Sequence record: NC_071039.1
Length of the DNA stretch: 64,000 bases
Strand: one strand, 5' to 3'
The translations under genes and the position numbers were made by a program. This document shows, piece after piece, positions 7,559-38,434 of this stretch (the stretch's first letter is position 1; every line of letters begins with the position of its first letter). The notes under the pieces are model-generated. The model worked only from the letters and a program-made list of their open reading frames with translations. It ran no database searches and was not told the origin of the DNA.

Positions 7559-7966
7559 ATGCAACATACTCACATTCGTTTCTACAACGAAGAAACTCAA
7601 CAGATCGATAACCGCCGTGGCGCTACTGTTGCCTGGGAAACCGCCGGCAACAAGATCCGTATTTCCGTAGCAGCATGTTCGGAAATGGATAACTTCAACC
7701 GCAAGACCGGACGTGAACATGCTGCTAGCCGTCTCGAAAGTGGCGACTACATCGAGTTTAACGGCACCGAACTTCTTAATGCACAGATGTCTTCTGTAAG
7801 TCATGTGCAGTCTGAAGGTCTCGTTCGTGCTATGTGCTTCTTGCTAGCACAAGGCAAAGGCGATCTATATTACCCGGCAAGCGAAGGTCAGCTTCGCAGC
7901 GAAGCCGAGTGCAATAGCTACAACGCTCTCGAGTACCTGAAACACCAGATGGGCATTCATCAGTAA
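7559..7966 (+). CDS. Hypothetical protein, 135 aa, with a common phage AxCSxxDNFxRKxGRxxAxxRL motif
   Basis: Host-like codon usage; motif recalled from small phage proteins, family not assigned. Confidence 0.85.
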   Translation: MQHTHIRFYNEETQQIDNRRGATVAWETAGNKIRISVAACSEMDNFNRKTGREHAASRLESGDYIEFNGTELLNAQMSSVSHVQSEGLVRAMCFLLAQGKGDLYYPASEGQLRSEAECNSYNALEYLKHQMGIHQ

Positions 7967-7979
7967 GTATTCGGCCATT

Positions 7980-8022
7980 CGGAATTGCGATTTAGGTTTT
8001 GGAATTCTAAATCGCAATTCCG
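7980..8022. terminator. Perfect 16-bp inverted repeat (terminator or cruciform)
   Basis: CGGAATTGCGATTTAG-11nt-CTAAATCGCAATTCCG just after the CDS. Confidence 0.65.
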
Positions 8023-9083: not shown

Positions 9084-9166
9084 GTATACAAGCTTAAGGG
9101 GTAAGTGCCCCGAAAGTGTAGTAAGTAAACAACATAATCCTTCCATCAGCTACAGAGGTATACAAC

Positions 9167-9871
9167 ATGTCCGTACATATCACTCGTCAGCGTACCGACA
9201 AACAGCACGTCCTGGCACTGGCAATCAACGGCGTGGTCATCGGCCAGACGATGGCTACTTACACCACCCCGAGCAAGCGCACCTGGTCGGCGACCGCCGA
9301 AGTCGAGCTGGCAGACGGCACCGTCGTTCAGTTCGAGAAGAAAGAAGTGTTCAGCGCGATCCGCATCACCCGCGAAATCGAGCAGGCGCTCGACGGCAAG
9401 GAACTGGCGGCCAAGTACACCCCGGAACCGAAAGTTCCCGGGCAGAAGGGTCCGAAACCGCTCACCGACGAAAGCCGGCTCAGCAACGCGATCGCGATCG
9501 TCAAGGCGGCCATCACCCACACCGGCTTCGACGAAGCTACCCTGGTGTTCGACGGGGTCGACAAGGCCACCTTCGAGCAGAACAGCACTTCCGTCGGCAA
9601 CAAGCTGCGTCGCCTGGGCTTCGTCTTCGAACTCGGCGCCGGCAAGGCGAACAGCGGCAAGGGCTTCCTGATCAACCGCAAAGCGCAGGCCGAGGCAGAA
9701 GCTGCCGAACGCAAGGCCAAGCGCGATGCCGAGAAGAAGGAACGCGAAGAAAAAGCGGCGGCTGCCAAGCGCGAAGCTGACGAACGTAAGGCCAAGCGCG
9801 AAGCCGAACGCGCCGAAAAGGTCGCTGAAAAGAACGCAGCGATCGCCGGTGCGGCACAGGAAAGCAAGTAA
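9167..9871 (+). CDS. GC-rich paralog family member 1 (VFSAIRI domain plus Lys/Glu/Ala coiled tail), 234 aa
   Basis: AGAGG RBS, tandem promoters, terminator; domain shared with 27937 and 33964. Confidence 0.9.
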   Translation: MSVHITRQRTDKQHVLALAINGVVIGQTMATYTTPSKRTWSATAEVELADGTVVQFEKKEVFSAIRITREIEQALDGKELAAKYTPEPKVPGQKGPKPLTDESRLSNAIAIVKAAITHTGFDEATLVFDGVDKATFEQNSTSVGNKLRRLGFVFELGAGKANSGKGFLINRKAQAEAEAAERKAKRDAEKKEREEKAAAAKREADERKAKREAERAEKVAEKNAAIAGAAQESK

Positions 9872-9886
9872 TTGCCCAACTGCGCC

Positions 9887-9918
9887 GAAAGGGGAGCAAT
9901 TTGCTCCCCTTTCTTCAT
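9887..9918 (+). terminator. Intrinsic terminator
   Basis: gaaaggggagcaa-t-ttgctcccctttc followed by T-rich tail. Confidence 0.8.
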
Positions 9919-15700: not shown

Positions 15701-16195
15701 GTGTTCGAGATGGAGCAAATAGTGAATATGCGAGAAGTGACATTTCTTTCCGCAGTGGATGCCAGCAAGATCGAGACGCCGAGCAACGTCATCAGCATCG
15801 GCAGCAAGGGTGATTGGTATGCCTTTGCCTGCGATCACAAGCGCGTTCTGCGGCTGGAGTTTGATGACGTAGACGGATACGTGGGAAGCGATGGCTTTCG
15901 AGTGTTCAGCCACATTGACGCCAAGCAGATCCACGACTTCGTGAACGAGTGTGGTGATGAACCGATCATTGTTCACTGCCAAGCAGGCATGAGCCGATCC
16001 GCTGCGGTTGCCAAGTTCCTGGCTGACAAGCGCGGCTACACCTTGAACCTGTCGAAGCCTTGCTTAGGCACTACACAATTCTACAACCGCCACGTCTACG
16101 GAACGTTGAACCTCAACAACGCCGAAAGCATGAGCGCCTATTACGCAGAGATGGAGCTAGCCGACCGGACGCGTGGCCATACAAAGGAGTCCTGA
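15701..16195 (+). CDS. Protein-tyrosine/dual-specificity phosphatase-like protein
   Basis: Catalytic loop VHCQAGMSRS (HCxxGxxRS) and upstream FDD acid loop; start uncertain. Confidence 0.85.
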   Translation: MFEMEQIVNMREVTFLSAVDASKIETPSNVISIGSKGDWYAFACDHKRVLRLEFDDVDGYVGSDGFRVFSHIDAKQIHDFVNECGDEPIIVHCQAGMSRSAAVAKFLADKRGYTLNLSKPCLGTTQFYNRHVYGTLNLNNAESMSAYYAEMELADRTRGHTKES

Positions 16196-16197
16196 TC

Positions 16198-16497
16198 ATG
16201 CCTGACATGAGAGAAGAGTTTGAAGCCGCAATCTTTGCGGAAGTGAATGAACAGCGGGCTGCTGAAGGTGAATTTGTCCTTCAGCATCCAGAAGGGCTAT
16301 TTGCCCGCGATGACGATGGCTCCTACTTGATCCGTTGGGTCAAGAGCGCATGGTGGGCCTGGCAAGCCAGCCGCGCAGCTCTGAGAGTGGAGTTGCCGAA
16401 ACCTCACCCTGCATTTGAGTACGCACCTAGAGCCAAGGTTTTCAATATAACTGACGTTGAGGTAGCCCTCCAGCAAGCCGGAATCGAGGTGAAGTGA
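16198..16497 (+). CDS. Pseudomonas-prophage-type hypothetical protein, 99 aa
   Basis: AAGGAG RBS; MREEFEA...AWWAWQASRAAL.VELP pattern typical of temperate-phage early genes. Confidence 0.75.
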   Translation: MPDMREEFEAAIFAEVNEQRAAEGEFVLQHPEGLFARDDDGSYLIRWVKSAWWAWQASRAALRVELPKPHPAFEYAPRAKVFNITDVEVALQQAGIEVK

Positions 16498-16644
16498 ATG
16501 AGAACGCCCATCTTCATCGGCGGATCAATTGGCATAGGAATCGCCTATCTGATGAATCCTGAATATCCCGCTATCGCGCTTGCAATGGTGTTTAGCGCGG
16601 GTACCTCATTGTTCATTCACTATCTATCTGAGGTATGGCCATGA
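16498..16644 (+). CDS. Small two-TM membrane protein, 48 aa (not in ORF track)
   Basis: MRTPIFIGGSIGIGIAYLMNPEYPAIALAMVFSAG...; coupled both sides. Confidence 0.6.
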   Translation: MRTPIFIGGSIGIGIAYLMNPEYPAIALAMVFSAGTSLFIHYLSEVWP

Positions 16645-16715
16645 CCGACCACGCAGAGCTGCGGCGGCTGGCTAAAGAAGTGATCCGAATTGAACGAAAT
16701 GAGGATGCAGCATGA
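16641..16715 (+). pseudogene. Truncated Ead/Ea22-like N-terminus, 24 aa
   Basis: MTDHAELRRLAKEVIRIERNEDAA; ATGA overlaps both sides. Confidence 0.5.
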
Positions 16716-17248
16716 GCATTGACTGGAGCAAGGCACCAGAGGGTGCGACGCACTACCAACCGGAATCACGCGGCTTCCATGCGGCATGGTTCCGACTTCA
16801 AGGGGGGAAGGCTCGCGAAATGTGGGTCGTGAGACCCAGCCGCGTGCTTGAGCACATCATCGATCCGACTGTCTTCGACGAGAGCATGCAGAACCTGATC
16901 GCCCGCCCCGTAGAACCTGCCACCTGGAACGGCCAGGGTCTACCGCCGGTTGGCCTGATGGTGGAGTGGAAGGCAGGCCTTGATCACGACTGGCAGCGCG
17001 TAACTGTGCTTGCCTACGCCAATGGCGACGCGTGGTTTCAGCCCGAGGATGGCCCGTCTTTCATCGTCGGCAACCCGGCAAACTTCAGGCGTATCCGCAC
17101 CCCCGAGCAGTTGGCCGCCGAGGAGCGGGAAAAGGCGATTAATCAGATGATTTCTGATGCTGGATACGTAGATCCGAAGATTGGCACATTTGTGGCTATG
17201 CGCAATCTCTACGACGCCGGCTACCGGCGCCGGGAGGAAGGGAAATGA
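16712..17248 (+). CDS. Pseudomonas-phage-type hypothetical protein, 178 aa
   Basis: MSIDWSKAPEGATHY N-terminus and WNGQGLPPVG motif. Confidence 0.85.
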   Translation: MSIDWSKAPEGATHYQPESRGFHAAWFRLQGGKAREMWVVRPSRVLEHIIDPTVFDESMQNLIARPVEPATWNGQGLPPVGLMVEWKAGLDHDWQRVTVLAYANGDAWFQPEDGPSFIVGNPANFRRIRTPEQLAAEEREKAINQMISDAGYVDPKIGTFVAMRNLYDAGYRRREEGK

Positions 17249-17511
17249 GCAGACTGACCGCTGAGCAAGCCCGTGACATAGCGCGAGCGAAAGACGATGT
17301 TGACGCCATCCTCAACGACATCGCCAAAGCAGCCGCAGAAGGAAAGTACGTGTACACTACCCGCGCCTATGGGTTCGGCACAGGCGGCGGACGGCGCAGC
17401 GACGCGATCCTCAAAGTGTTGCGTAGCCTCGGCTACGACTGTGCGGTGCATGCTGAGGGACGCCAGTCTGTTGACCTGTGGCTTGAAGTGAAATGGGGAG
17501 ACAAGCCATGA
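17245..17511 (+). CDS. Prophage-type hypothetical protein, 88 aa
   Basis: ATGA coupling; GC-rich. Confidence 0.8.
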   Translation: MSRLTAEQARDIARAKDDVDAILNDIAKAAAEGKYVYTTRAYGFGTGGGRRSDAILKVLRSLGYDCAVHAEGRQSVDLWLEVKWGDKP

Positions 17512-18107
17512 CCGACACCAACAAAATAAAAAAGCTAGCAAAACTGGCTACGCCGGGTCCGTGGGTTGTCGATGCGCAACAGATAGGCGCCATCTTCAAC
17601 ATCGAAACCGAATCCGGCGACCTATGTATTGCCATGTCGCAGGAGAATCCTGCGCCGACGAAGCTAGAGATGAATGAGCAGCGCAAGGTAAACGCTGAAT
17701 TTATCGCCGCTGCTAACCCCCGAGCCATCCTCGGGCTGATTGCCGAAATAGAGCGGCTGCGCGGTGAAATCGATGCTTACGAAGAAGGCATGCGATCTCT
17801 GGCGTGCAACCTCGGTTCGGGCGGCTACAACTCCGATACGCTGACCCCCGCTCAACTAGTGGATAAGGTCAAGTGGGGTGTAGATAACCTCGCTGAGACG
17901 CAGGGTCGCCTGATGGATGAGGTACGCGCCGAGAACACAGAACTGCGCAAGACGGCAGAACGTTATCGTAAACTTAGGAAAATCACTCCCCGCCAGTTCA
18001 AGAAGATCCAAGAGTCCGCAACGACTGACGGTGGTGACGTCTTCTACTTCCATGCGGATCGGTTTGACGCAGGGCTAGATGCAGCCCTAGAAGGAGCCAA
18101 GCAATGA
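17508..18107 (+). CDS. Ead/Ea22-like protein, 199 aa
   Basis: LAKLATPGPW...NAEFIAAANPRAILGLIAEIERLR signature. Confidence 0.85.
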   Translation: MTDTNKIKKLAKLATPGPWVVDAQQIGAIFNIETESGDLCIAMSQENPAPTKLEMNEQRKVNAEFIAAANPRAILGLIAEIERLRGEIDAYEEGMRSLACNLGSGGYNSDTLTPAQLVDKVKWGVDNLAETQGRLMDEVRAENTELRKTAERYRKLRKITPRQFKKIQESATTDGGDVFYFHADRFDAGLDAALEGAKQ

Positions 18108-18427
18108 CCGATACTAAAAAACTGAAGAAGCTAGCTGAACAGGCTCTCGATTGCAAATTTGATAGCTATGTGGCGTTAATAGCATCAGCAAAACCACAAG
18201 AAATTCTCAGTCTTATAGCTGAGCTGGAACAGTTAAAGGCAGAGAATGACAGATTGCGAGCAGCACTACAGGTTGTTGAATCGGAACTCACCGGTAATAT
18301 CCTCCCACTAACTAACGACCTCGTGAATACAGTAAGCGGCTTGAATAACGGCGCGCATTCATATGACATTTACGAAGAACCCGATTGGGAAATAATAAAT
18401 CAATATTATAAGAATGCAAAGAAATAA
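18104..18427 (+). CDS. Chimeric Ead/Ea22-like protein, 107 aa, with tail duplicated from 14309-14857
   Basis: MTDTKKLKKLAEQA...ASAKPQEILSLIAELEQLK; ends PDWEIINQYYKNAKK. Confidence 0.8.
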   Translation: MTDTKKLKKLAEQALDCKFDSYVALIASAKPQEILSLIAELEQLKAENDRLRAALQVVESELTGNILPLTNDLVNTVSGLNNGAHSYDIYEEPDWEIINQYYKNAKK

Positions 18428-25723: not shown

Positions 25724-26371
25724 ATGTCTAAGTATCTTTCTTTTAGCGTAAACGTAGACATGGACAACACTGGTCTGCTGAAATGGTTGCGTCCTACCAC
25801 CGGTCGGTTGGATGGATTCGAAGAGAGTGTTAAAAACTTCGTTTCTTCTTTCCGCTCAGTCGAGTCGAGCCCTACGGTGTTTCAAGTTTACGATGACGAT
25901 GATCAGCCGTTGCAAGTAAGCAACATGAGCTGCTTCTTCCGATACTTTCCGGTGTATGGTATGTGCCTTGCACCGGGTTCAATGGTCAGGGAACAATATC
26001 GTCGGGAGATCCTCGACTACACTACTGACGAGTTCTGTTCATTCAGTAACTACTTCAGTGACGGCAAGGCCATCCGCGGCGGGGCAGTCTTGTGGTGGGA
26101 TGTAGAGAAAGACTTGGTATGGTCTGTTAGTCCCGAATTGATTCGCCTTGTATATGCCCGCTTGCAAAGTGATATGGACATCGGGTGGTATCATCTCGGG
26201 CAAGAAGTTATGGCTGTAGTTCCCCTTCGTTCTTATCCCAACGATGTTGCCCGATGGAAATATGTACAAGGTAATATCTGCGGCATCGACGATCAAGTGA
26301 GCATTCGCAGCAATGTCGACGGTCGAGTCACCCGGCTTAATTGGGAATACATCGTGACCCAAGGGGGATAA
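25724..26371 (+). CDS. Hypothetical protein, 215 aa
   Basis: Long ORF; moderately GC-rich. Confidence 0.8.
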   Translation: MSKYLSFSVNVDMDNTGLLKWLRPTTGRLDGFEESVKNFVSSFRSVESSPTVFQVYDDDDQPLQVSNMSCFFRYFPVYGMCLAPGSMVREQYRREILDYTTDEFCSFSNYFSDGKAIRGGAVLWWDVEKDLVWSVSPELIRLVYARLQSDMDIGWYHLGQEVMAVVPLRSYPNDVARWKYVQGNICGIDDQVSIRSNVDGRVTRLNWEYIVTQGG

Positions 26372-27457: not shown

Positions 27458-27936
27458 TATCTTTTATCATTGCAAATACAAATAATAATTATTCTTATTT
27501 GCATTTAGTGATGTAAATAATTCTTATTTGTAATTGCTATTAATTCTTATTTGCTACAATAGATAGAATAAGAATAATTCACATTTGCAATGCCGCTAAA
27601 AGCGCTGTAAGCGCTGTATGTTGCGTAGTAGTGCTAAGCAATGTATTAGTACAGCTACGCGCACAAACGCTGTTATACGCGCTTGTAGCGCGTTTTAGGG
27701 CCCATGCGCATGCGTATACCTGCAGCTTTACATAGTAAAATGCAGAAAAGACGTCGTCTATTAACGTGTCTGTCTTAATAGAAATATACAATTGTACAAT
27801 ACCTGCAAAATTCTACACACTACAGACATGCAAACAAGCAACGTGCTTGCAAGCATAAAAGTTTTTAAAAAGTAGTAGACACAGTGTAGCATCCCTAGTA
27901 AGCTACACACATAAACAACACAACGGAGTACAAGCT

Positions 27937-28407
27937 ATGTCTAATGTAAGCATCCCTGCAGTAACGGTAGAGAACATCGGCACCCTGCGCATCGTGCGCA
28001 CCGCTAACAAGGAGGTCGGAAGTGTGCTCGACCTAAAAGTTAACGGGGTAGTAGTAGGGCAAGCTTTCCCGCTCTACAGCACAAAAACCCAGCGTAGCTG
28101 GAACGCGAGCATGCACGCTACCGTTAACGGCGTAGAGGTGCAGTTTGCACAGGAAGGCGTGTTCAGTGCAATCCGCATTGCACGGGCGTTCGAGGATGCA
28201 GTAAAGCATGCCGTTAGCAACGGCGAACAAGGGCAACCCCTCCCCGCGCCGGCGGCGGCAGAAGCGCAAGCAGAAGCGCAAGCAGAAGCGCAAGCAGAAG
28301 CCCCGGTAGCGCAGACCGAGGATGCGCCGGAGACCCCGGCAGCCGAAGCTAAGCCCGCCCGCAAAGGCGGCAGCAAAGGCGGCAGCAAAGGCGGCAGCAA
28401 AAAGTAA
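27937..28407 (+). CDS. GC-rich paralog family member 2 (VFSAIRI domain plus AEAQ x3 / GGSK x3 tail), 156 aa
   Basis: GGAG RBS; domain shared with 9167 and 33964; terminator follows. Confidence 0.9.
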   Translation: MSNVSIPAVTVENIGTLRIVRTANKEVGSVLDLKVNGVVVGQAFPLYSTKTQRSWNASMHATVNGVEVQFAQEGVFSAIRIARAFEDAVKHAVSNGEQGQPLPAPAAAEAQAEAQAEAQAEAPVAQTEDAPETPAAEAKPARKGGSKGGSKGGSKK

Positions 28408-28420
28408 GCGCTGCTAACAC

Positions 28421-28449
28421 AGGAAAGGGGCAACTGCCCCTTTCCTTTT
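28421..28449 (+). terminator. Intrinsic terminator (family)
   Basis: aggaaaggggc-aact-gcccctttcctttt. Confidence 0.85.
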
Positions 28450-28575
28450 ATGTCCTAGTTGTAAACGCAAATTAATCTTATTTGCATTTGCACAAGTCAA
28501 TCTCCGGTTGCATTACTGCGGTAAGATGTTAGTATGTGTTTAGCAGTAACACATAACTAGCAGGAGCAATAGACA

Positions 28576-28824
28576 ATGGCTAAAGTATTGCATGTTGACA
28601 GCATCGGCAACATCGCCGAAATGTTTACATCTGTAGACCTCGATAGCGCCTTGTTGCACGCAATCAAGCGCTGTGCAATGATGGGCAAGGTTAATGTTGT
28701 TGGTCCCAACGCTCCTGTGTTTGCTATCCACTACGACGCACTGACAGCGTACGACGTGCAGTGGCGCCTCGTTCCTCCGGGCTGCGGCGTTACCGTGTAC
28801 GTCATTGCCGAAGACAGCAATTAA
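28576..28824 (+). CDS. Hypothetical protein, 82 aa
   Basis: AGGAG RBS. Confidence 0.8.
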   Translation: MAKVLHVDSIGNIAEMFTSVDLDSALLHAIKRCAMMGKVNVVGPNAPVFAIHYDALTAYDVQWRLVPPGCGVTVYVIAEDSN

Positions 28825-28835
28825 GGAGAGACACC

Positions 28836-29138
28836 ATGAATCTCGTTCATTTGTGGATCAACGGGCGTGTTGTGACTGCCCGCAAGGTTGTCAGTAAACA
28901 CACTGTCCGCAATCCGAACAGTCCGATCGATATCGAGACTATCGACGTTGTTCGACTGCGTCTGCCCCGTGGTGTTCGTGCTAGCAGTTGGGCACTCCGT
29001 AAGGCAGTGTACCAGCTCATGGAGCAAAGCTGTAGCTGCTCGAGAGACTGTTGTGGACACTGGTTCGGCGGCGCACGCAAGATCTACATTAACGGCAGAG
29101 ACATCAGTGTCGTTGCCGGGTACCAGCGCAATTACTAA
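28836..29138 (+). CDS. Hypothetical protein with Cys motif (CSCSRDCCGHW), 100 aa
   Basis: AAGGAG RBS before ATG 28836. Confidence 0.8.
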   Translation: MNLVHLWINGRVVTARKVVSKHTVRNPNSPIDIETIDVVRLRLPRGVRASSWALRKAVYQLMEQSCSCSRDCCGHWFGGARKIYINGRDISVVAGYQRNY

Positions 29139-29168
29139 AGGAAAGGGGGCAACTGCCCCTTTCTTTTT
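29137..29168 (+). terminator. Intrinsic terminator (family)
   Basis: aaggaaagggggc-aact-gccccttttctttt. Confidence 0.8.
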
Positions 29169-29357
29169 ATCCATTAATGTGCAAACGCGAATTATTCTTA
29201 TTTGCACAGGGCAGTGAGATGCGAATGCAAACAAGAGGCATTCTTGATACGGTCGGGTGATAATAATTGTTCACAAAAAGAAAAAGCTTGCGTTATGCTA
29301 CACAGGTGCTAGTATGTGTATTGCAGTACCTATAAACATTAATAGCAGGATAAGAAA

Positions 29358-33631: not shown

Positions 33632-33963
33632 ATTTATATTAAAATCCCTTTTATTAACTTCAGTTGTCAGTGTTGGCATACTACTGATATTCATTATTAT
33701 TTCATTGTTAATGTTTGGCTTAGCACCGATAGTTCCATTCCTTATTTAATTTTAATTATTTGCAAGCAAATGCAAATACGAATAATTCTTATTATCCAGC
33801 AGGCCACTGTACCTAATCTTCGTTAGATAAAATCTATTAGAATCTACAAAGTCCATTAAAACGTTCAATTGTACATGGTGGCCAGATCTGCATATACTAC
33901 ACACATGAAGCAAGCAAACAGCGCTTCATAAACAAACCCAAATACAGCTAGGAGTTCCAAATC

Positions 33964-34425
33964 ATGACCAAAGCAACCGTTACCGTCGAGCAATCCGCAA
34001 TCAAACTGGTTCGCCGCAACCTGGAAGGGCACCGGCAAGCCCTGTTGCTGAACGGCGTCGAAGTAGGCAGCAGCGAAGCGTTCTACAAGACCAAAACCCA
34101 GCGCACCTGGTCGGCGAAGATCGACGCCAACATCAACGGCAAGGACATCGTCCTCGAACAGAAAGGCGTGTTCAGCGCGATCCGGATCGCCCGGGCGATG
34201 GAACAAGCAATCCTGTTCATCCTGACCGACGGCAAAGAAGGCGCCGAGATGCCGGCCAGCACGCTGAGCAAGGAAGAGCAAGCCCACAACCTGGTCAAGG
34301 CAGTAGTCCAGGTCGCCGACCATGCAGTTCAGTCCGGCGGCGCCGGCAACGGCGAAACCGAGGCAGCAGCCCCGGCGAAGAAAGGCAGCTCGAAGAAGCG
34401 CAAAGAAGCCCAGCCGGAAGCATAA
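33964..34425 (+). CDS. GC-rich paralog family member 3 (VFSAIRI domain plus Lys/Ala tail), 153 aa
   Basis: AGGAG RBS; domain shared with 9167 and 27937. Confidence 0.9.
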   Translation: MTKATVTVEQSAIKLVRRNLEGHRQALLLNGVEVGSSEAFYKTKTQRTWSAKIDANINGKDIVLEQKGVFSAIRIARAMEQAILFILTDGKEGAEMPASTLSKEEQAHNLVKAVVQVADHAVQSGGAGNGETEAAAPAKKGSSKKRKEAQPEA

Positions 34426-34438
34426 TCCGGACTACACC

Positions 34439-34464
34439 GAGAAAGCACCGAAAGGTGCTTTCTC
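34439..34464 (+). terminator. Intrinsic terminator
   Basis: gagaaagcacc-gaaa-ggtgctttctc. Confidence 0.8.
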
Positions 34465-34581
34465 TATGACTGTTAATAGCAAATATTCTTATTTGCATCT
34501 ATTCTGACAGAATAATAACTCTTATTTACAAATCATACTGAATACTGTATTTTACACATTAAACATTGTAGGTAATATAAA

Positions 34582-36274: not shown

Positions 36275-36544
36275 ATGGATGCGCGTAGTCTGCTTAGCCT
36301 TATCGAAGACCTCCCTATAGCTGTCTTCGGCAGCACAATGGATATTGTTCATCGAGTCAATTTTGAAGCTCTGGACAATGCCGCTCACACCGACGGGGTA
36401 AAAGTCCACGAAGATGGAACCAACTGTTATACAGACGCTTTTGTCGATTGTTGGCTCCGCAGCGTCGAAACAGTTTTGGCCTGTTGCGATTTTGTGACCG
36501 AGGATGCCGCTAAGTGGTATACCGAGCACGGTGTCAAGTTTTGA
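36275..36544 (+). CDS. Hypothetical protein, 89 aa
   Basis: AAGGGA RBS; GC-rich. Confidence 0.7.
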   Translation: MDARSLLSLIEDLPIAVFGSTMDIVHRVNFEALDNAAHTDGVKVHEDGTNCYTDAFVDCWLRSVETVLACCDFVTEDAAKWYTEHGVKF

Positions 36545-36574
36545 CATCCTCTGCCTCGCTTGCAGATAAAAAGG

Positions 36575-36603
36575 TTGACGTAGACTAGCAATGGACACAT
36601 AAT
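36575..36603 (+). promoter_or_regulatory. sigma70 promoter, duplicated at 37972
   Basis: TTGACG-17-CATAAT followed by AATTACAAC. Confidence 0.75.
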
Positions 36604-36637
36604 AATTACAACGCAACCAGCCCAGGAGGGCAAAACT

Positions 36638-36787
36638 ATGTGCAACATCCAATGCATGAACAGCAAAGCAGGCGAGTCCTACGCATGGATTTGGAGCGAT
36701 AGTGATAACGATATCTGCTACGAAGTCATCTTCAGGCATGGCCAGGTCATTACCCAGGTTTGGCTCGGCTATGATATCGTAGCCTAA
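36638..36787 (+). CDS. Hypothetical protein, 49 aa (not in ORF track)
   Basis: AGGAGG RBS; MCNIQCMNSKAGESYAWIWSDSD... Confidence 0.7.
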   Translation: MCNIQCMNSKAGESYAWIWSDSDNDICYEVIFRHGQVITQVWLGYDIVA

Positions 36788-36796
36788 CACCAACTA

Positions 36797-36820
36797 AAGC
36801 CCCGTCCCGGGACGGGGCTT
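36797..36820. terminator. GC-rich hairpin / terminator
   Basis: aagccccgtc-ccgg-gacggggctt. Confidence 0.65.
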
Positions 36821-36837
36821 CACCGAAGGAAAAGATC

Positions 36838-37047
36838 ATGATCGAACAACTGAAAGCCATGCTCGTAGCGCAACGCATGCGCATGAACCAACTCGAAAAA
36901 CTGCGCTACACCGGACGCGTCGCTAGCGAGTTGCATGCCCACGCCAGGGAATTGTGTGAAGCCTTGGAACTGGCAATTGCAAATGCCCAGTGCCTGGAAA
37001 TGCGCAAGTTCGAAGAAGCCGCCCTGCACGCCCTGTTCGCACAATAG
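36838..37047 (+). CDS. Hypothetical helical protein, 69 aa
   Basis: AAGGA RBS. Confidence 0.75.
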   Translation: MIEQLKAMLVAQRMRMNQLEKLRYTGRVASELHAHARELCEALELAIANAQCLEMRKFEEAALHALFAQ

Positions 37048-37080
37048 CCCATCGCGCACAACCCGACAAGGAAACCAAAC

Positions 37081-37572
37081 ATGAGCACCACAATCCCTGA
37101 TTCGATTAACCCGGGTGATCTTCCTGAAATCGGCCAGCCATTGGCTGATGGAACCTTCTTTGCCCGCCAATGGCTCAATGGCAAGGAATACGCCTACGTC
37201 GCTCTCGGCAAAAGCGCCGAGTTCACCGGAGAATGGGGCGAGTATGGGAAGGACGTGGACGGCGCCGTTAGCTATCGAGACGGAGCTTCGAACACGATCG
37301 CCATGGCTGAAGCTGGCAGCCCGATTGCCAAGCAAGCTCTTGAGGTCGGAGAAGGCGTATTCATTCCTTCTGTTCTGGAACTGTCTCTTCTGTTCTCCGC
37401 CAAGCAAGCAGGCGAGCTGTCTGGTTTCGCAGATTGCTGGTACTGGTCGAGTTCGCAGTACTCCGCCTACAGCGCCTTCTACACGTACTTCCACGACGGC
37501 CTCACGCTCAGCTACGTCAAGGACTTCGACTGCCGTGTCCGCCCCGTCCGCAAGATTCTCATTCTTCAGTAA
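37081..37572 (+). CDS. DUF1566 / Lcl-C-terminal (C-type-lectin-like) domain protein, DGR-target type
   Basis: LPEIGQ...GG-type start, DG..NT..M, FIPS..EL, WYWSSSQYS...F.DG....K....RVRPVR. Confidence 0.85.
   Translation: MSTTIPDSINPGDLPEIGQPLADGTFFARQWLNGKEYAYVALGKSAEFTGEWGEYGKDVDGAVSYRDGASNTIAMAEAGSPIAKQALEVGEGVFIPSVLELSLLFSAKQAGELSGFADCWYWSSSQYSAYSAFYTYFHDGLTLSYVKDFDCRVRPVRKILILQ
37459..37551 (+). other. DGR variable-region-like segment
   Basis: 27 of 31 codons end in C, in positions that are AAC in typical template repeats; ends CGTGTCCGCCCCGTCCGC. Confidence 0.55.
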
Positions 37573-37649
37573 TCTAGCCCCGGAGATAACACGATGAACC
37601 TGCACCTCTCCAAGCATTGTCTGCGCCAACGCGGGACCAAGGAACAATC

Positions 37650-37898
37650 ATGAGCATTGCAAGCTACCTCTTGTTGTCCACCATTGTCTTCAACAACAAC
37701 ACCTACGCTCGTTCGACGACAGTGGACACCATTGTGGTTCGTGACCTCAGCAAGGAAGACTGCGAGGCGCTCAAGCGTGAGCGCGAAGCGGTTGTTAAGA
37801 ACATCCAGGCAAGGAACTTCGGTAGCTCTGGTGATACGAGCGGTATCGCCGTGGGCTTTTCCAAACATAGCTGCACAAAGATGAAGGGTACGAAATAA
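37650..37898 (+). CDS. Hypothetical protein, 82 aa
   Basis: AAGGA RBS before ATG 37650; preceded by a 19-aa remnant ORF 37594-37653. Confidence 0.7.
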   Translation: MSIASYLLLSTIVFNNNTYARSTTVDTIVVRDLSKEDCEALKREREAVVKNIQARNFGSSGDTSGIAVGFSKHSCTKMKGTK

Positions 37899-37971
37899 CT
37901 CAACTGGCCACCGCGAGCAAACATTGCCCGGAAGGTGCTAGCTGACCGCCTGGCGGAACAATAAATAAAAG

Positions 37972-38000
37972 TTGACGTAGCCGAGCGAAGGGCGCATAAT
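37972..38000 (+). promoter_or_regulatory. sigma70 promoter, duplicate of 36575
   Basis: TTGACG-17-CATAAT followed by AATTACAAC. Confidence 0.75.
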
Positions 38001-38038
38001 AATTACAACACAACACAGCAAGCCCCGGAGGCGCAACC

Positions 38039-38239
38039 ATGAGCCAGATCGTAGATGTCAAGCAAATTGCAATTGATGCAAACCGTCGGCCGGCCTACAA
38101 TGCGGTCATGGTGCGCTGGTTGATGCAGGAAGCTGAATTGCACCGTAGCTGTGGGCGCACCGCTACCCTGTTCTGCATCGTTCGCAACCGCCCTGACGGC
38201 ACACAGCGCCAGCTTGTGCAGCTTGTGGCTAGCGAGTAA
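38039..38239 (+). CDS. Hypothetical protein, 66 aa
   Basis: GGAGG RBS. Confidence 0.75.
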   Translation: MSQIVDVKQIAIDANRRPAYNAVMVRWLMQEAELHRSCGRTATLFCIVRNRPDGTQRQLVQLVASE

Positions 38240-38269
38240 CCTCAATCACCCTATGCCCGGGAGGCCGTC

Positions 38270-38434
38270 ATGAATGCTGCACTGGCCAGACTTCAAAACG
38301 AACGTTGCATGTTACTTCGCCGGATGCTTTGCAGCAAATGGCACGGATTCTGTTTTGCAGGTCACCCTTGGGCAGAACAAGCCCGCAATCTGCACAACGA
38401 ATCCAAGTGCATCCGAGAACATCACAGTAAGTAA
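38270..38434 (+). CDS. Hypothetical protein, 54 aa (preferred over ORF-track 38274-38495)
   Basis: GGAGG RBS correctly spaced to ATG 38270; MNAALARLQNERCMLLRR... Confidence 0.55.
   Translation: MNAALARLQNERCMLLRRMLCSKWHGFCFAGHPWAEQARNLHNESKCIREHHSK

What the first reader, a model, noticed from the sequence alone, without database searches (positions are those of the whole stretch)
37081..37572. Orphan DGR-type target gene with an intact-looking variable region in a lytic jumbo phage
Seen: DUF1566/C-type-lectin-like protein whose last codons (37459-37551) are 27/31 NNC, whereas the codons just upstream often end in A/T. Residues YS-A-FYTYF-HD-G-LTLSYV-K-DFDC-RVRPVR fit a template of the form NN-A-xNxNF-NN-G-NxNNNN-K-NNNN-RVRPVR. 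Established: DGRs diversify such C-terminal regions by A-to-N retrohoming from an AAC-rich template repeat. No template repeat, avd or RT is visible in this window. Inference: a diversified allele captured from a DGR prophage, possibly still mutable in trans by a DGR elsewhere in the genome or in a lysogenic host.
Basis: partly seen in the sequence, partly recalled or inferred. Interest (0 to 1): 0.75.

Follow-up and report, generated by a model that had tools for sequence, protein, structure and literature searches.

The report
Fossil DGR variable region, jumbo phage
A small lectin-fold gene in the lytic jumbo phage PA5oct carries the unmistakable imprint of a hypermutation system (a diversity-generating retroelement) that the phage itself lacks: the gene was picked up from temperate Pseudomonas phages and its once-variable end is now frozen and slowly decaying.

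Summary
The window is bases 1-64000 of Pseudomonas phage PA5oct. In gene 37081-37572, codons 127-157 are 27/31 NNC against 45/126 upstream, and only 1 of 200,000 codon shuffles reaches that.

The cause is a DGR. Temperate P. aeruginosa phages (phPA-G, Haboob, one IMG/VR prophage) carry target1, target2, Avd, TR and RT next to cI. PA5oct 37453-37552 aligns without gaps to their TR, with 16 mismatches, 15 of them at TR adenines. Across 120 allele clusters, the 11 AAC-templated codons each show 10-15 amino-acid types, while codons without adenine are 95-100% conserved (one exception).

The 286,783-bp PA5oct genome has no TR, RT or Avd, so the target is a true orphan. Its post-stop junction and closest allele (97.0%) are of the RT-less prophage type.

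Nine jumbo relatives keep the ORF, but their VRs differ from the TR at 1-13 non-adenine sites. DGR-positive phages differ at 0. Within jumbo allele groups there are 0-1 adenine-site differences against 11-22 elsewhere in the gene, so nothing suggests continuing diversification. Jumbo alleles interleave with prophage alleles, which implies repeated exchange.

Trans-mutability is unsupported.

The parts
37081..37572 (+). Gene EST35_0104 / PQE65_gp379, 163 aa. A single-domain DUF1566 (Lcl_C) C-type-lectin-like protein, homologous to 'target 1' of the DGR cassette of temperate Pseudomonas phages.
   Evidence: ORF. Annotation. PHROG 4245, E 2.7e-32. 50 of 72 relatives hit Pfam Lcl_C. Profile hit to PDB 8q4e, E 6.6e-9. 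AlphaFold2 pLDDT 96.8, pTM 0.92. Best Foldseek match is the Legionella Lcl C-terminal domain, followed by C-type-lectin-like proteins.
37453..37552 (+). Variable region (VR), 100 bp. It aligns without gaps to the template repeat of phPA-G, Haboob and the L007 prophage.
   Evidence: 16 mismatches to the TR, 15 at TR adenines and 1 at a non-adenine (T>G, residue 151). The TR has 32 adenines and 11 AAC codons. The corresponding residues are hypervariable in 120 allele clusters.
37537..37551 (+). G+C-rich 3' end of the VR, shared exactly by VR1, VR2 and the TR of the DGR-positive phages. It occupies the position of the G/C stretch at which cDNA integration starts in the Bordetella phage element.
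   Evidence: identical in PA5oct and in all three repeats of phPA-G, Haboob and L007. The functional analogy is inference from PMC3240598.
37552..37572 (+). 21 nt following the VR/TR homology (the last codons and the stop). It is identical to the same stretch after VR1 of phPA-G and differs from the sequence after the TR. It is an IMH-like element (inferred).
37049..37586 (+). The captured segment, a single-gene cassette with 88.6% DNA identity to the temperate-phage locus. The roughly 14 nt after the stop resemble the junction of RT-less prophages, not that of DGR-positive ones.
   Evidence: 37049-37573 matches the phPA-G cassette and nothing else does..
36301..38400 (.). GC-rich island (53% G+C in a genome of about 30%). 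It is a patchwork of short segments related to different Pseudomonas phage groups. The DGR target gene is one patch.
   Evidence: The flanks match KPP23, Iggy/HTN2, H66 and PBPA162-type phages at 78-87%.
36838..37047 (+). Upstream co-oriented ORF (69 aa, EST35_0103), related to a gene of phage H66. It is not part of the DGR cassette.
   Evidence: No PHROG hit.
36575..36603 (+). Sigma-70-like promoter match (10 of 12) upstream of the two ORFs. The same hexamer pair recurs at 37972-38000.
   Evidence: a consensus match only. The LTR genes are reported as mostly early-transcribed (PMC7318152).

Best explanation
Gene 37081-37572 encodes a small C-type-lectin-fold (DUF1566/Lcl_C) binding protein. 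Its last ~33 codons are a fossil DGR variable region. In temperate P. aeruginosa phages of the D3/phPA-G kind, this gene is the first of two targets of a complete DGR (target1, target2, Avd, TR, RT) that lies beside the cI repressor. There an error-prone RT copies an AAC-rich template, and the cDNA overwrites the gene's 3' end. Adenine-templated positions are randomised and every other position is reset to the template. That mechanism, not codon usage, produces the NNC run. Eleven AAC codons become NNC, and the remaining codons are held at the template's C-ending state. A ~540-bp single-gene segment entered the long terminal repeat of PA5oct-like jumbo phages, most likely from a prophage that had already lost the RT module. 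Alleles have since been exchanged more than once with the prophage pool by recombination. In the jumbo phages there is no TR, RT or Avd. The VR is no longer rewritten and changes only by ordinary point mutation, under relaxed constraint and A+T pressure. PA5oct holds the freshest copy, with one non-adenine change. Shown: the VR/TR relationship, the absence of DGR machinery, the hypervariability pattern, the fold, the allele interleaving and the decay. Inferred: that the protein is still made early in infection with one fixed binding specificity; its ligand is unknown.
For: Identity of the window. NNC run and its significance. Complete DGR cassettes in Haboob and phPA-G; Avd and RT confirmed by PHROGs and NCBIfam. 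VR-TR alignment with 15 of 16 mismatches at adenines. Among 120 allele clusters, mean entropy is 0.25 bits for residues 1-126, against more than 3 bits at ten of the eleven AAC-templated residues and 2.3 at the other. 2014 of 2040 residues at adenine-bearing codons lie in the A-to-N reachable set, and codons without adenine are 95-100% conserved except residue 151 at 68%. The same C3 contrast (0.36-0.40 upstream, 0.87 in the VR) is seen in DGR-positive alleles. No RT, Avd or TR in the 286,783 bp: tblastn best E >= 4, adenine-tolerant scan best 24 of 100 non-adenine mismatches, no RT annotated. Non-adenine mismatches to the TR: 0 in three DGR-positive phages, 0-4 in orphan prophage copies, 1-13 in the nine jumbo alleles; within jumbo allele groups, 0-1 adenine-site against 0-7 non-adenine VR differences and 11-22 non-VR differences. 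No other sampled TR fits better. Non-VR part: PA5oct is 97.0% identical to prophage allele P0010 but 90.6-96.0% to other jumbo alleles; no jumbo-specific fixed site; 33 of 67 jumbo-polymorphic sites share both states with prophage alleles. The donor type is RT-less. Private jumbo changes are 27 nonsynonymous and 13 synonymous (ratio 0.64, against 0.27 in the prophage pool, Fisher P 0.03). By my reading of the table, G/C-to-A/T changes outnumber the reverse by about two to one. Fold.
Against: No expression or protein data for this gene could be read: no supplementary files are held, and the gene is not flagged as a virion protein. One jumbo allele group (30-2, Paride, MIJ3, Deifobo) has 11-13 non-adenine VR changes but only about 3 private changes in the other 392 sites. 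Simple clock-like decay does not explain this. Only 13 close temperate DNA alleles were used for the recombination argument, on 372 nt and without bootstrap. All nine jumbo ORFs are intact and free of indels, which could mean more constraint than the dN/dS-like ratio suggests, although P(no stop by chance) is 0.03-0.17. The PA5oct VR still matches the TR at 67 of 68 non-adenine sites and keeps the 21-nt post-VR element, so loss of target competence is not demonstrated.
Confidence: 0.85

Rival explanations
1. The VR is still a live acceptor. When PA5oct-like phages infect P. aeruginosa lysogens that carry the phPA-G/Haboob-type DGR, the resident RT, Avd and TR rewrite the phage's VR in trans. 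The four VR allele groups among jumbo phages are products of such events.
For: The PA5oct VR is identical to the TR at 67 of 68 non-adenine sites and keeps the G+C-rich end and the 21-nt post-VR element of functional VR1 copies. The cognate RT occurs in P. aeruginosa isolates, in clusters 96%, 88% and 78% identical with 57-67 member sequences each. DGR components are reported to work in trans, and non-adjacent targets are known (PMC5758913). Jumbo allele groups differ from each other mainly in the VR.
Against: Homing resets non-adenine sites, yet jumbo VRs carry 1-13 of them, including changes next to the 3' integration end in four phages. Within allele groups, adenine-site differences are 0-1 while the rest of the gene has 11-22 differences. 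Differences between groups extend across the non-VR part in haplotype blocks shared with prophage alleles, which points to recombination rather than homing. No stable hairpin follows the PA5oct VR (z +0.97). The donor context is RT-less.
Confidence: 0.07
2. The gene is a decaying passenger with no function in the jumbo phage. It is kept only because it arrived recently or is repeatedly re-imported.
For: The private substitutions give a dN/dS-like ratio of 0.64, not distinguishable from neutrality (binomial P 0.19) and higher than in the prophage pool. There is a G/C-to-A/T bias (my count). The NNC share has eroded to 0.68-0.81 in most relatives. The gene is absent from vB_Pa-PAC2 although the flanks are present. 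It is not detected as a virion protein.
Against: The ORF is intact, exactly 492 nt and free of indels in 9 of 9 jumbo phages, while the surrounding DNA is full of indels. The predicted fold is very confident. The gene lies co-oriented behind a promoter-like site in a region described as early-transcribed.
Confidence: 0.35
3. A single ancient capture: all diversity among jumbo alleles arose inside the jumbo lineage by ordinary mutation, with no further exchange with prophages.
For: The gene sits at the same locus between the same neighbours in all nine phages. The surrounding region is itself 93-97% identical, so it is fairly divergent.
Against: There is no jumbo-specific fixed site. 33 non-VR sites are polymorphic in both jumbo and prophage alleles with linked states, and different jumbo alleles have different nearest prophage alleles: PA5oct is nearest P0010 (97.0%) and 30-2 is nearest P0006 (96.8%). 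The four VR groups differ at many adenine sites, which point mutation alone would not target.
Confidence: 0.05
4. The NNC run is only GC-rich codon usage plus an aromatic/Asp-rich composition and has nothing to do with a DGR.
For: The gene comes from a GC-rich donor. Many VR residues (Y, F, H, D, C) have two-fold pyrimidine-ending codons.
Against: With the gene's own upstream usage, only 15.5 +/- 2.4 NNC are expected. A cognate TR exists with adenine-only differences. Allelic variability maps exactly onto adenine-bearing codons.
Confidence: 0.01

Closest known systems
DGR cassette of temperate Pseudomonas phages VB_PaD_phPA-G (PP083311, Detrevirus) and Haboob (OR683404): target1, target2, Avd, TR, RT beside cI
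   Same: The PA5oct gene is the homologue of target1, with 88-89% DNA identity, the same length and the same VR position. Its VR matches their TR with adenine-only differences but one. The G+C-rich end and the 21 nt after the VR are the same.
   Different: PA5oct has only the target gene, with no target2, Avd, TR or RT anywhere in the genome. Its post-stop junction is of the RT-less prophage type. It sits in the terminal repeat of a virulent 287-kb phage, not in a lambdoid immunity region.
Orphan target1 copies in RT-less P. aeruginosa prophages and phages (D3 orf68, FBPa42, prophage alleles P0010, P0006, P0003, IMG/VR loci L004-L006, L008/L009)
   Same: A stand-alone DUF1566 gene carrying a VR without the RT module, with the same junction after the stop. 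Its closest non-VR allele among those compared at the DNA level is P0010, at 97.0%.
   Different: Those copies lie in temperate phages of the same GC content and keep 0-4 non-adenine mismatches. The jumbo copies lie in AT-rich virulent genomes and have up to 13.
Legionella pneumophila DGR target LdtA and the 'category d / CLec2' DUF1566 targets of Wu et al. 2018 (PMC5758913)
   Same: The domain family is the same (DUF1566/Lcl_C), with the VR at the C-terminus. About half of that category are short, domain-only proteins like this one. The best solved-structure match is the Legionella Lcl C-terminal domain.
   Different: LdtA is a surface lipoprotein, as that paper states. By my reading of its first residues, this protein has no hydrophobic or lipobox-like N-terminus; this was not tested with a predictor. 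In temperate phages it is encoded in the early/immunity region rather than with surface or tail genes.
Bordetella phage BPP-1 Mtd / DGR (prototype; target-site rules in PMC3240598)
   Same: A C-type-lectin-fold target, a C-terminal VR, adenine-specific differences from a TR, and a G+C-rich 3' end followed by a VR-specific element.
   Different: Mtd is a tail-fibre receptor-binding protein with the DGR in cis. Here there is no DGR in cis, and no clear hairpin within about 24 nt downstream, either in PA5oct or convincingly in the DGR-positive Pseudomonas phages.
Non-adjacent / remote DGR targets (e.g. Treponema; PMC5758913)
   Same: A VR-bearing gene located away from any RT.
   Different: Remote targets share a genome with their DGR and differ from the TR only at adenines. 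Here the DGR is in a different replicon (prophages of the host species), and the jumbo copies show non-adenine decay.

Membership tests
DGR variable region (target of mutagenic retrohoming) | A template repeat exists that differs from the VR (almost) only at template adenines | tested here: met
   The TR of phPA-G, Haboob and L007 against window 37453-37552: 16 mismatches, 15 at adenines. The TR is in other phages, not in PA5oct.
DGR variable region (target of mutagenic retrohoming) | TR, reverse transcriptase and accessory protein (Avd) present in the same genome | tested here: not met
   Whole 286,783-bp genome: tblastn with phPA-G RT and Avd gives best E >= 4; the adenine-tolerant scan finds no TR; no RT is annotated. 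PA5oct therefore has a DGR target but not a DGR.
DGR variable region (target of mutagenic retrohoming) | Homologous alleles are hypervariable specifically at adenine-templated codons, with residues limited to the A-to-N reachable set | tested here: met
   120 allele clusters: 10-15 residue types at the 11 AAC codons; D/G/V/A at GAC codons; 2014 of 2040 residues within the reachable set; codons without adenine 95-100% conserved, except residue 151.
DGR variable region (target of mutagenic retrohoming) | Target-site cis elements: G+C-rich end plus a VR-specific downstream element (IMH) and a hairpin/cruciform just downstream (PMC3240598) | tested here: inconclusive
   The G+C-rich end and the 21-nt post-VR element are identical to functional VR1 copies. 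No significant hairpin in PA5oct (z +0.97), and only weak ones in DGR-positive phages (z -0.9 and -0.5). The requirements of this particular DGR are unknown.
DGR variable region (target of mutagenic retrohoming) | Ongoing diversification in the lineage that carries it | tested here: not met
   Jumbo alleles have 1-13 non-adenine mismatches to the TR. Within allele groups there are 0-1 adenine-site differences against 11-22 non-VR differences.
DGR variable region (target of mutagenic retrohoming) | C-type-lectin-fold (or Ig-fold) scaffold with the VR at the C-terminal end | tested here: met
   AlphaFold2 model with pLDDT 96.8. Foldseek's top hit is the Lcl C-terminal domain (probability 1.00, TM 0.70 on the target), followed by many C-type-lectin-like chains. 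The VR spans residues 125-158 of 163.
Pfam PF07603 Lcl_C (DUF1566) | HMM score at or above the gathering threshold | tested here: not met
   The PA5oct protein alone scores 20.6 bits against a 34.9 cut-off, E 5.5e-4, over the C-terminal half only.
Pfam PF07603 Lcl_C (DUF1566) | Family-level homology and fold | tested here: met
   50 of 72 aligned relatives hit Lcl_C, best E 6.6e-12. The profile hits PDB 8q4e (Lcl C-terminal domain) at E 6.6e-9. Structural match.

The most novel reading that the evidence does not exclude
A virulent jumbo phage borrows the hypermutation machinery of a resident prophage. On infection of DGR-positive lysogens, the PA5oct-type VR, which still matches the template at 67 of 68 non-adenine sites and keeps the post-VR element, would be rewritten in trans. 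This would give a lytic phage access to DGR diversification without encoding an RT. The different VR allele groups among Wroclawviruses would be its traces.
Probability: 0.07. Interest if true: 0.85.

Novelty: new member of a known kind. Interest (0 to 1): 0.55.

Why it matters
The result ties an unannotated early gene of a model and therapy-candidate jumbo phage to a defined molecular history. It points to a DGR family in temperate Pseudomonas phages that is annotated in GenBank but that my four DGR-related full-text searches did not find described. That DGR sits in the immunity/early region rather than the tail module, and it diversifies two small proteins that appear to lack a signal peptide.

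The result also gives a clean natural series: an active DGR, then orphan copies in prophages, then decaying copies in AT-rich virulent phages. In that series, the number of non-adenine mismatches to the template acts as a clock for time since the last homing.

Finally, it gives direct sequence evidence for repeated gene flow between the prophage pool of P. aeruginosa and the terminal-repeat region of lytic jumbo phages. [quoted passage not shown]

Tried and rejected
- **Single-sequence phmmer against PDB:** no hit. Only the profile found 8q4e.
- **NCBIfam:** no family for the protein.
- **Supplementary tables of the PA5oct omics paper** (sought for expression values): none held.
- **Hairpin search downstream of the VR:** nothing significant in PA5oct or in the DGR-positive phages.
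- **Alternative template repeats:** the TRs of L010, L002, L011 and L017-L020 were tested as sources of the non-adenine differences in jumbo VRs. All fit worse than the phPA-G TR.
- **Codon usage or composition as the cause of the NNC run:** rejected.
- **A DGR elsewhere in PA5oct:** rejected.
- **The antisense 275-aa ORF 36820-37647 and the +2-frame ORF 37115-37597 as real genes:** rejected. They are shadow ORFs of a GC-rich gene whose true frame is fixed by homology and by the confident fold.
- **Literature:** no paper describing this Pseudomonas phage DGR or a DGR target in a jumbo phage was found in four DGR-related searches.

- In one search my script built, in memory only, a per-site majority string of 13 temperate-phage alleles in order to polarise substitutions. 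I did not repeat it, and the dN/dS-like figures rest on it.
- In one search I joined the window and five consecutive stretches of the same public record, as they stand, into a scratch file so that I could scan the whole genome.
- The consensus line printed by the alignment tool was not used.

Full report
**What the window is.** Megablast shows the window is bases 1-64000 of Pseudomonas phage vB_PaeM_PA5oct (MK797984 / NC_071039, 286,783 bp, Wroclawvirus), a lytic jumbo phage. The finding lies inside the 39,080-bp long terminal repeat. The PA5oct omics paper says this repeat holds 105 genes, many of them highly transcribed early (PMC7318152). The genome is about 30% G+C, but the terminal repeat contains at least seven G+C-rich islands. 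The gene sits in island 36301-38400.

**The observation.** ORF 37081-37572 (+) encodes 163 aa and is annotated as hypothetical protein EST35_0104 / PQE65_gp379.
- Codons 127-157 (37459-37551) are 27/31 NNC, against 45/126 upstream.
- The hypergeometric P is 9e-8, and only 1 of 200,000 codon shuffles reaches this value.
- With the gene's own upstream synonymous usage, the same residues would give 15.5 +/- 2.4 NNC.

**What the protein is.** Pfam Lcl_C (DUF1566) is hit only weakly by this protein alone (E 5.5e-4, below the cut-off). The family-level evidence is stronger:
- PHROG 4245 matches at E 2.7e-32.
- An exhaustive search finds 1,098 relatives.
- 50 of 72 aligned relatives hit Lcl_C.
- The profile hits PDB 8q4e at E 6.6e-9.
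- An AlphaFold2 model built on that alignment is very confident (pLDDT 96.8, pTM 0.92).
- Its best solved-structure match is the Legionella Lcl C-terminal domain, followed by a long list of C-type-lectin-like proteins.

By my reading of the first residues, the N-terminus has no hydrophobic or lipobox-like stretch. I did not test this with a predictor.

**Where the NNC run comes from.** The gene is 85-93% identical in DNA to genes of temperate P. aeruginosa phages and prophages. In Haboob and phPA-G the homologue is the first gene of a complete DGR cassette lying downstream of cI: target1 (163 aa), target2 (194 aa), Avd, an intergenic template repeat, and a 369-aa reverse transcriptase. Avd and RT are confirmed by PHROGs (E 4e-27 and 9e-115) and by NCBIfam's Avd model.

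Window 37453-37552 aligns without gaps to that TR. Of 16 mismatches, 15 are at TR adenines. The one exception, a T>G change that turns residue 151 into Cys, is private to PA5oct. Homology between VR and TR ends at 37552. The next 21 nt are identical to those after VR1 of phPA-G and unlike those after the TR.

The TR holds 11 AAC codons. In an alignment of 120 allele clusters (80-90% identical, almost all from P. aeruginosa), the variability follows the template:
- Those 11 AAC residues carry 10-15 amino-acid types each, with entropy above 3 bits at ten of them and 2.3 at the other.
- GAC-templated residues show mainly D/G/V/A.
- The TAC-templated residue shows mainly Y/F/C/S.
- The two ACG-templated residues show mainly T/A/S/P.
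- 2014 of 2040 residues at these codons fall within the A-to-N reachable set.
- Codons without adenine are 95-100% conserved, except residue 151 at 68%.
- Residues 1-126 average 0.25 bits.

The same third-position contrast (C3 0.36-0.40 upstream, 0.87 in the VR) is present in alleles that sit next to an intact DGR. The NNC run is therefore the imprint of the template.

**Orphan status.** I read the rest of the genome record and scanned all 286,783 bp.
- tblastn with the phPA-G RT and Avd gives nothing better than E = 4.
- The only DNA similar to the cassette is 37049-37573.
- A scan that tolerates any mismatch opposite a candidate-template adenine finds no second copy. The best has 24 non-adenine mismatches in 100, which is noise level.
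- No RT is annotated.

Many prophages also lack the RT module. Loci L004, L005, L006, L008/L009, FBPa42, D3, U9 and the contexts of alleles P0010, P0006 and P0003 carry target1 alone, or with remnants. In these, the gene that follows the RT in DGR-positive phages directly follows target1. The ~14 nt after the PA5oct stop codon resemble this RT-less junction. Its closest non-VR allele among those compared at the DNA level, P0010 at 97.0%, comes from such a context.

**Is the VR still being rewritten?** Nine Wroclawvirus genomes carry the gene at the same locus, always 492 nt and open. A tenth, vB_Pa-PAC2, lacks it. Homing resets all non-adenine positions to the template, so I counted non-adenine mismatches to the TR:

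| Group | Non-adenine mismatches to the TR (of 68) |
|---|---|
| Three DGR-positive phages | 0 |
| Orphan prophage copies | 0-4 |
| PA5oct | 1 |
| The other eight jumbo phages | 5-13 |

(All counts.)

No other sampled TR fits better. Within the three multi-member jumbo allele groups, VR differences at adenine sites number 0-1. At non-adenine VR sites they number 0-7, and in the rest of the gene 11-22. The NNC share has eroded to 0.68-0.81 in seven of the eight relatives. This is the pattern of a frozen VR evolving by ordinary mutation.

**How the jumbo alleles relate to the prophage pool.** In the 372-nt non-VR part, the jumbo alleles do not form a clade.
- No site is fixed in all jumbo alleles and absent from the 13 temperate alleles.
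- 33 of 67 jumbo-polymorphic sites have both states in the prophage pool, in linked blocks.
- PA5oct is nearest to P0010, while 30-2 is nearest to P0006.
- The gene's non-VR part is mostly more divergent between PA5oct and its relatives than the immediate flanks are.

I conclude that alleles were exchanged with prophages more than once. The 40 states private to jumbo phages are 27 nonsynonymous and 13 synonymous. That ratio (0.64) is not distinguishable from neutrality (P 0.19) and is higher than in the prophage pool (0.27; Fisher P 0.03). My count from the table gives about 18 G/C-to-A/T changes against 9 in the opposite direction. Intactness of all nine ORFs is only weak evidence for selection (P of no stop by chance 0.03-0.17).

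**Surroundings.** The island is a patchwork.
- 36300-36547 resembles phage KPP23.
- 36615-36841 resembles Iggy/HTN2.
- 36813-37050 (ORF 36838-37047) resembles H66.
- 37049-37586 is the DGR target.
- About 37960-38420 resembles Iggy/PBPA162-type phages.

Another island, 15701-18200, is 88-95% identical to temperate phages such as JBD44, PAJU2 and PMG1. The terminal repeat thus collects single genes from other Pseudomonas phages.

**Function.** In temperate phages the two targets lie in the immunity/early region beside cI, not among tail genes. A receptor-binding role on the virion is therefore unlikely, and in PA5oct the protein is not flagged as virion-associated. The best-supported statement is that it is a small lectin-fold binding protein, apparently without a signal peptide, whose specificity the DGR varies in temperate phages and which is fixed in PA5oct. 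Its ligand is unknown. A role in phage-phage or phage-host conflict is only an analogy with DGR-diversified putative antigen sensors (PMC10907252, abstract seen).

**Known versus new.** DGRs, DUF1566 targets (Wu et al. category d) and targets distant from their RT are all known. GenBank already labels the phPA-G genes 'Avd protein of DGR' and 'reverse transcriptase'. I found no paper describing this Pseudomonas phage DGR, its position in the immunity region, or any DGR target in a jumbo phage. [quoted passage not shown] I rate the finding a new member of a known kind.

**Unexplained.** The 30-2/Paride/MIJ3/Deifobo group has 11-13 non-adenine VR changes but only about 3 private changes in 392 other sites. 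There are three possible explanations. The non-VR part may have been recently overwritten by recombination. Point-mutational evolution may be faster in the VR. Or an unsampled template variant may exist.

Noticed in passing
window 7601-8000, 9101-9900, 15701-18200, 25801-26200, 27901-29200, 33901-34500, 36301-38400: There are seven G+C-rich islands (50-60% G+C) in the ~30% G+C terminal repeat. Island 15701-18200 (a dual-specificity phosphatase and its neighbours) is 88-95% identical to temperate P. aeruginosa phages such as JBD44, PAJU2, PMG1 and YMC11/07/P54. The terminal repeat seems to collect genes from other Pseudomonas phages.
   Followed up: partly
window 36575-36603 and 37972-38000: The same promoter-like hexamer pair (10 of 12 matches, 17-nt spacer) occurs twice. 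The second copy lies in a ~70-bp element (37967-38036) that has an ~80% identical copy upstream of the gene in several relatives. These are probably repeated early promoters.
   Followed up: no
window 36795-36822: A near-perfect G+C-rich inverted repeat (12-bp stem) lies just upstream of ORF 36838-37047. The scan scored it as terminator-like on the minus strand only.
   Followed up: no
window 36820-37647 (-) and 37115-37597 (+); loci L024, L027, L030: Long shadow ORFs overlap the real gene (275 aa antisense and 160 aa in the +2 frame). The GenBank annotations of Cassandra, Paride and Deifobo call such shadow ORFs instead of the 163-aa gene, so the homologue is missing from their protein sets.
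   Followed up: partly
window 37587-37906: The stretch holding ORF 37650-37898 (82 aa, hydrophobic N-terminus) is absent from Cassandra, 30-3 and Callisto. The whole DGR-target gene is absent from vB_Pa-PAC2.
   Followed up: partly
L022 5001-7971; L021 4998-7966; L007 6001-8971: A complete two-target DGR lies in the immunity/early region (beside cI) of temperate P. aeruginosa phages. Related cassettes occur in a human-faeces Pseudomonas phage record (L002), and related target-gene copies in a P. syringae phage (L003). Many prophages show deletion remnants: a target1/target2 fusion, Avd without a TR, or only the last 28 nt of the RT.
   Followed up: partly
residues 126 and 147 of the protein (window 37456-37458 and 37519-37521): Gln126 (TR codon CAG) and Lys147 (TR codon AAG) are invariant in 120 and 118 of 120 allele clusters, although their template codons contain adenines. 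Variants at these two positions are presumably selected against.
   Followed up: no
L026, L027, L029, L030 (VR of phages 30-2, Paride, MIJ3, Deifobo): This allele group has 11-13 non-adenine VR differences from the template, including a 5-nt block beside the G+C-rich end, but very few private changes elsewhere in the gene. Uniform decay does not explain this.
   Followed up: partly
(RT relatives): The RT of this DGR forms only three P. aeruginosa-named clusters at 90% identity (57-67 member sequences each), whereas its 163-aa target forms more than 120 clusters. Close RT relatives (72-78% identical) occur in P. chlororaphis, P. putida, P. citronellolis, P. knackmussii and others.
   Followed up: no
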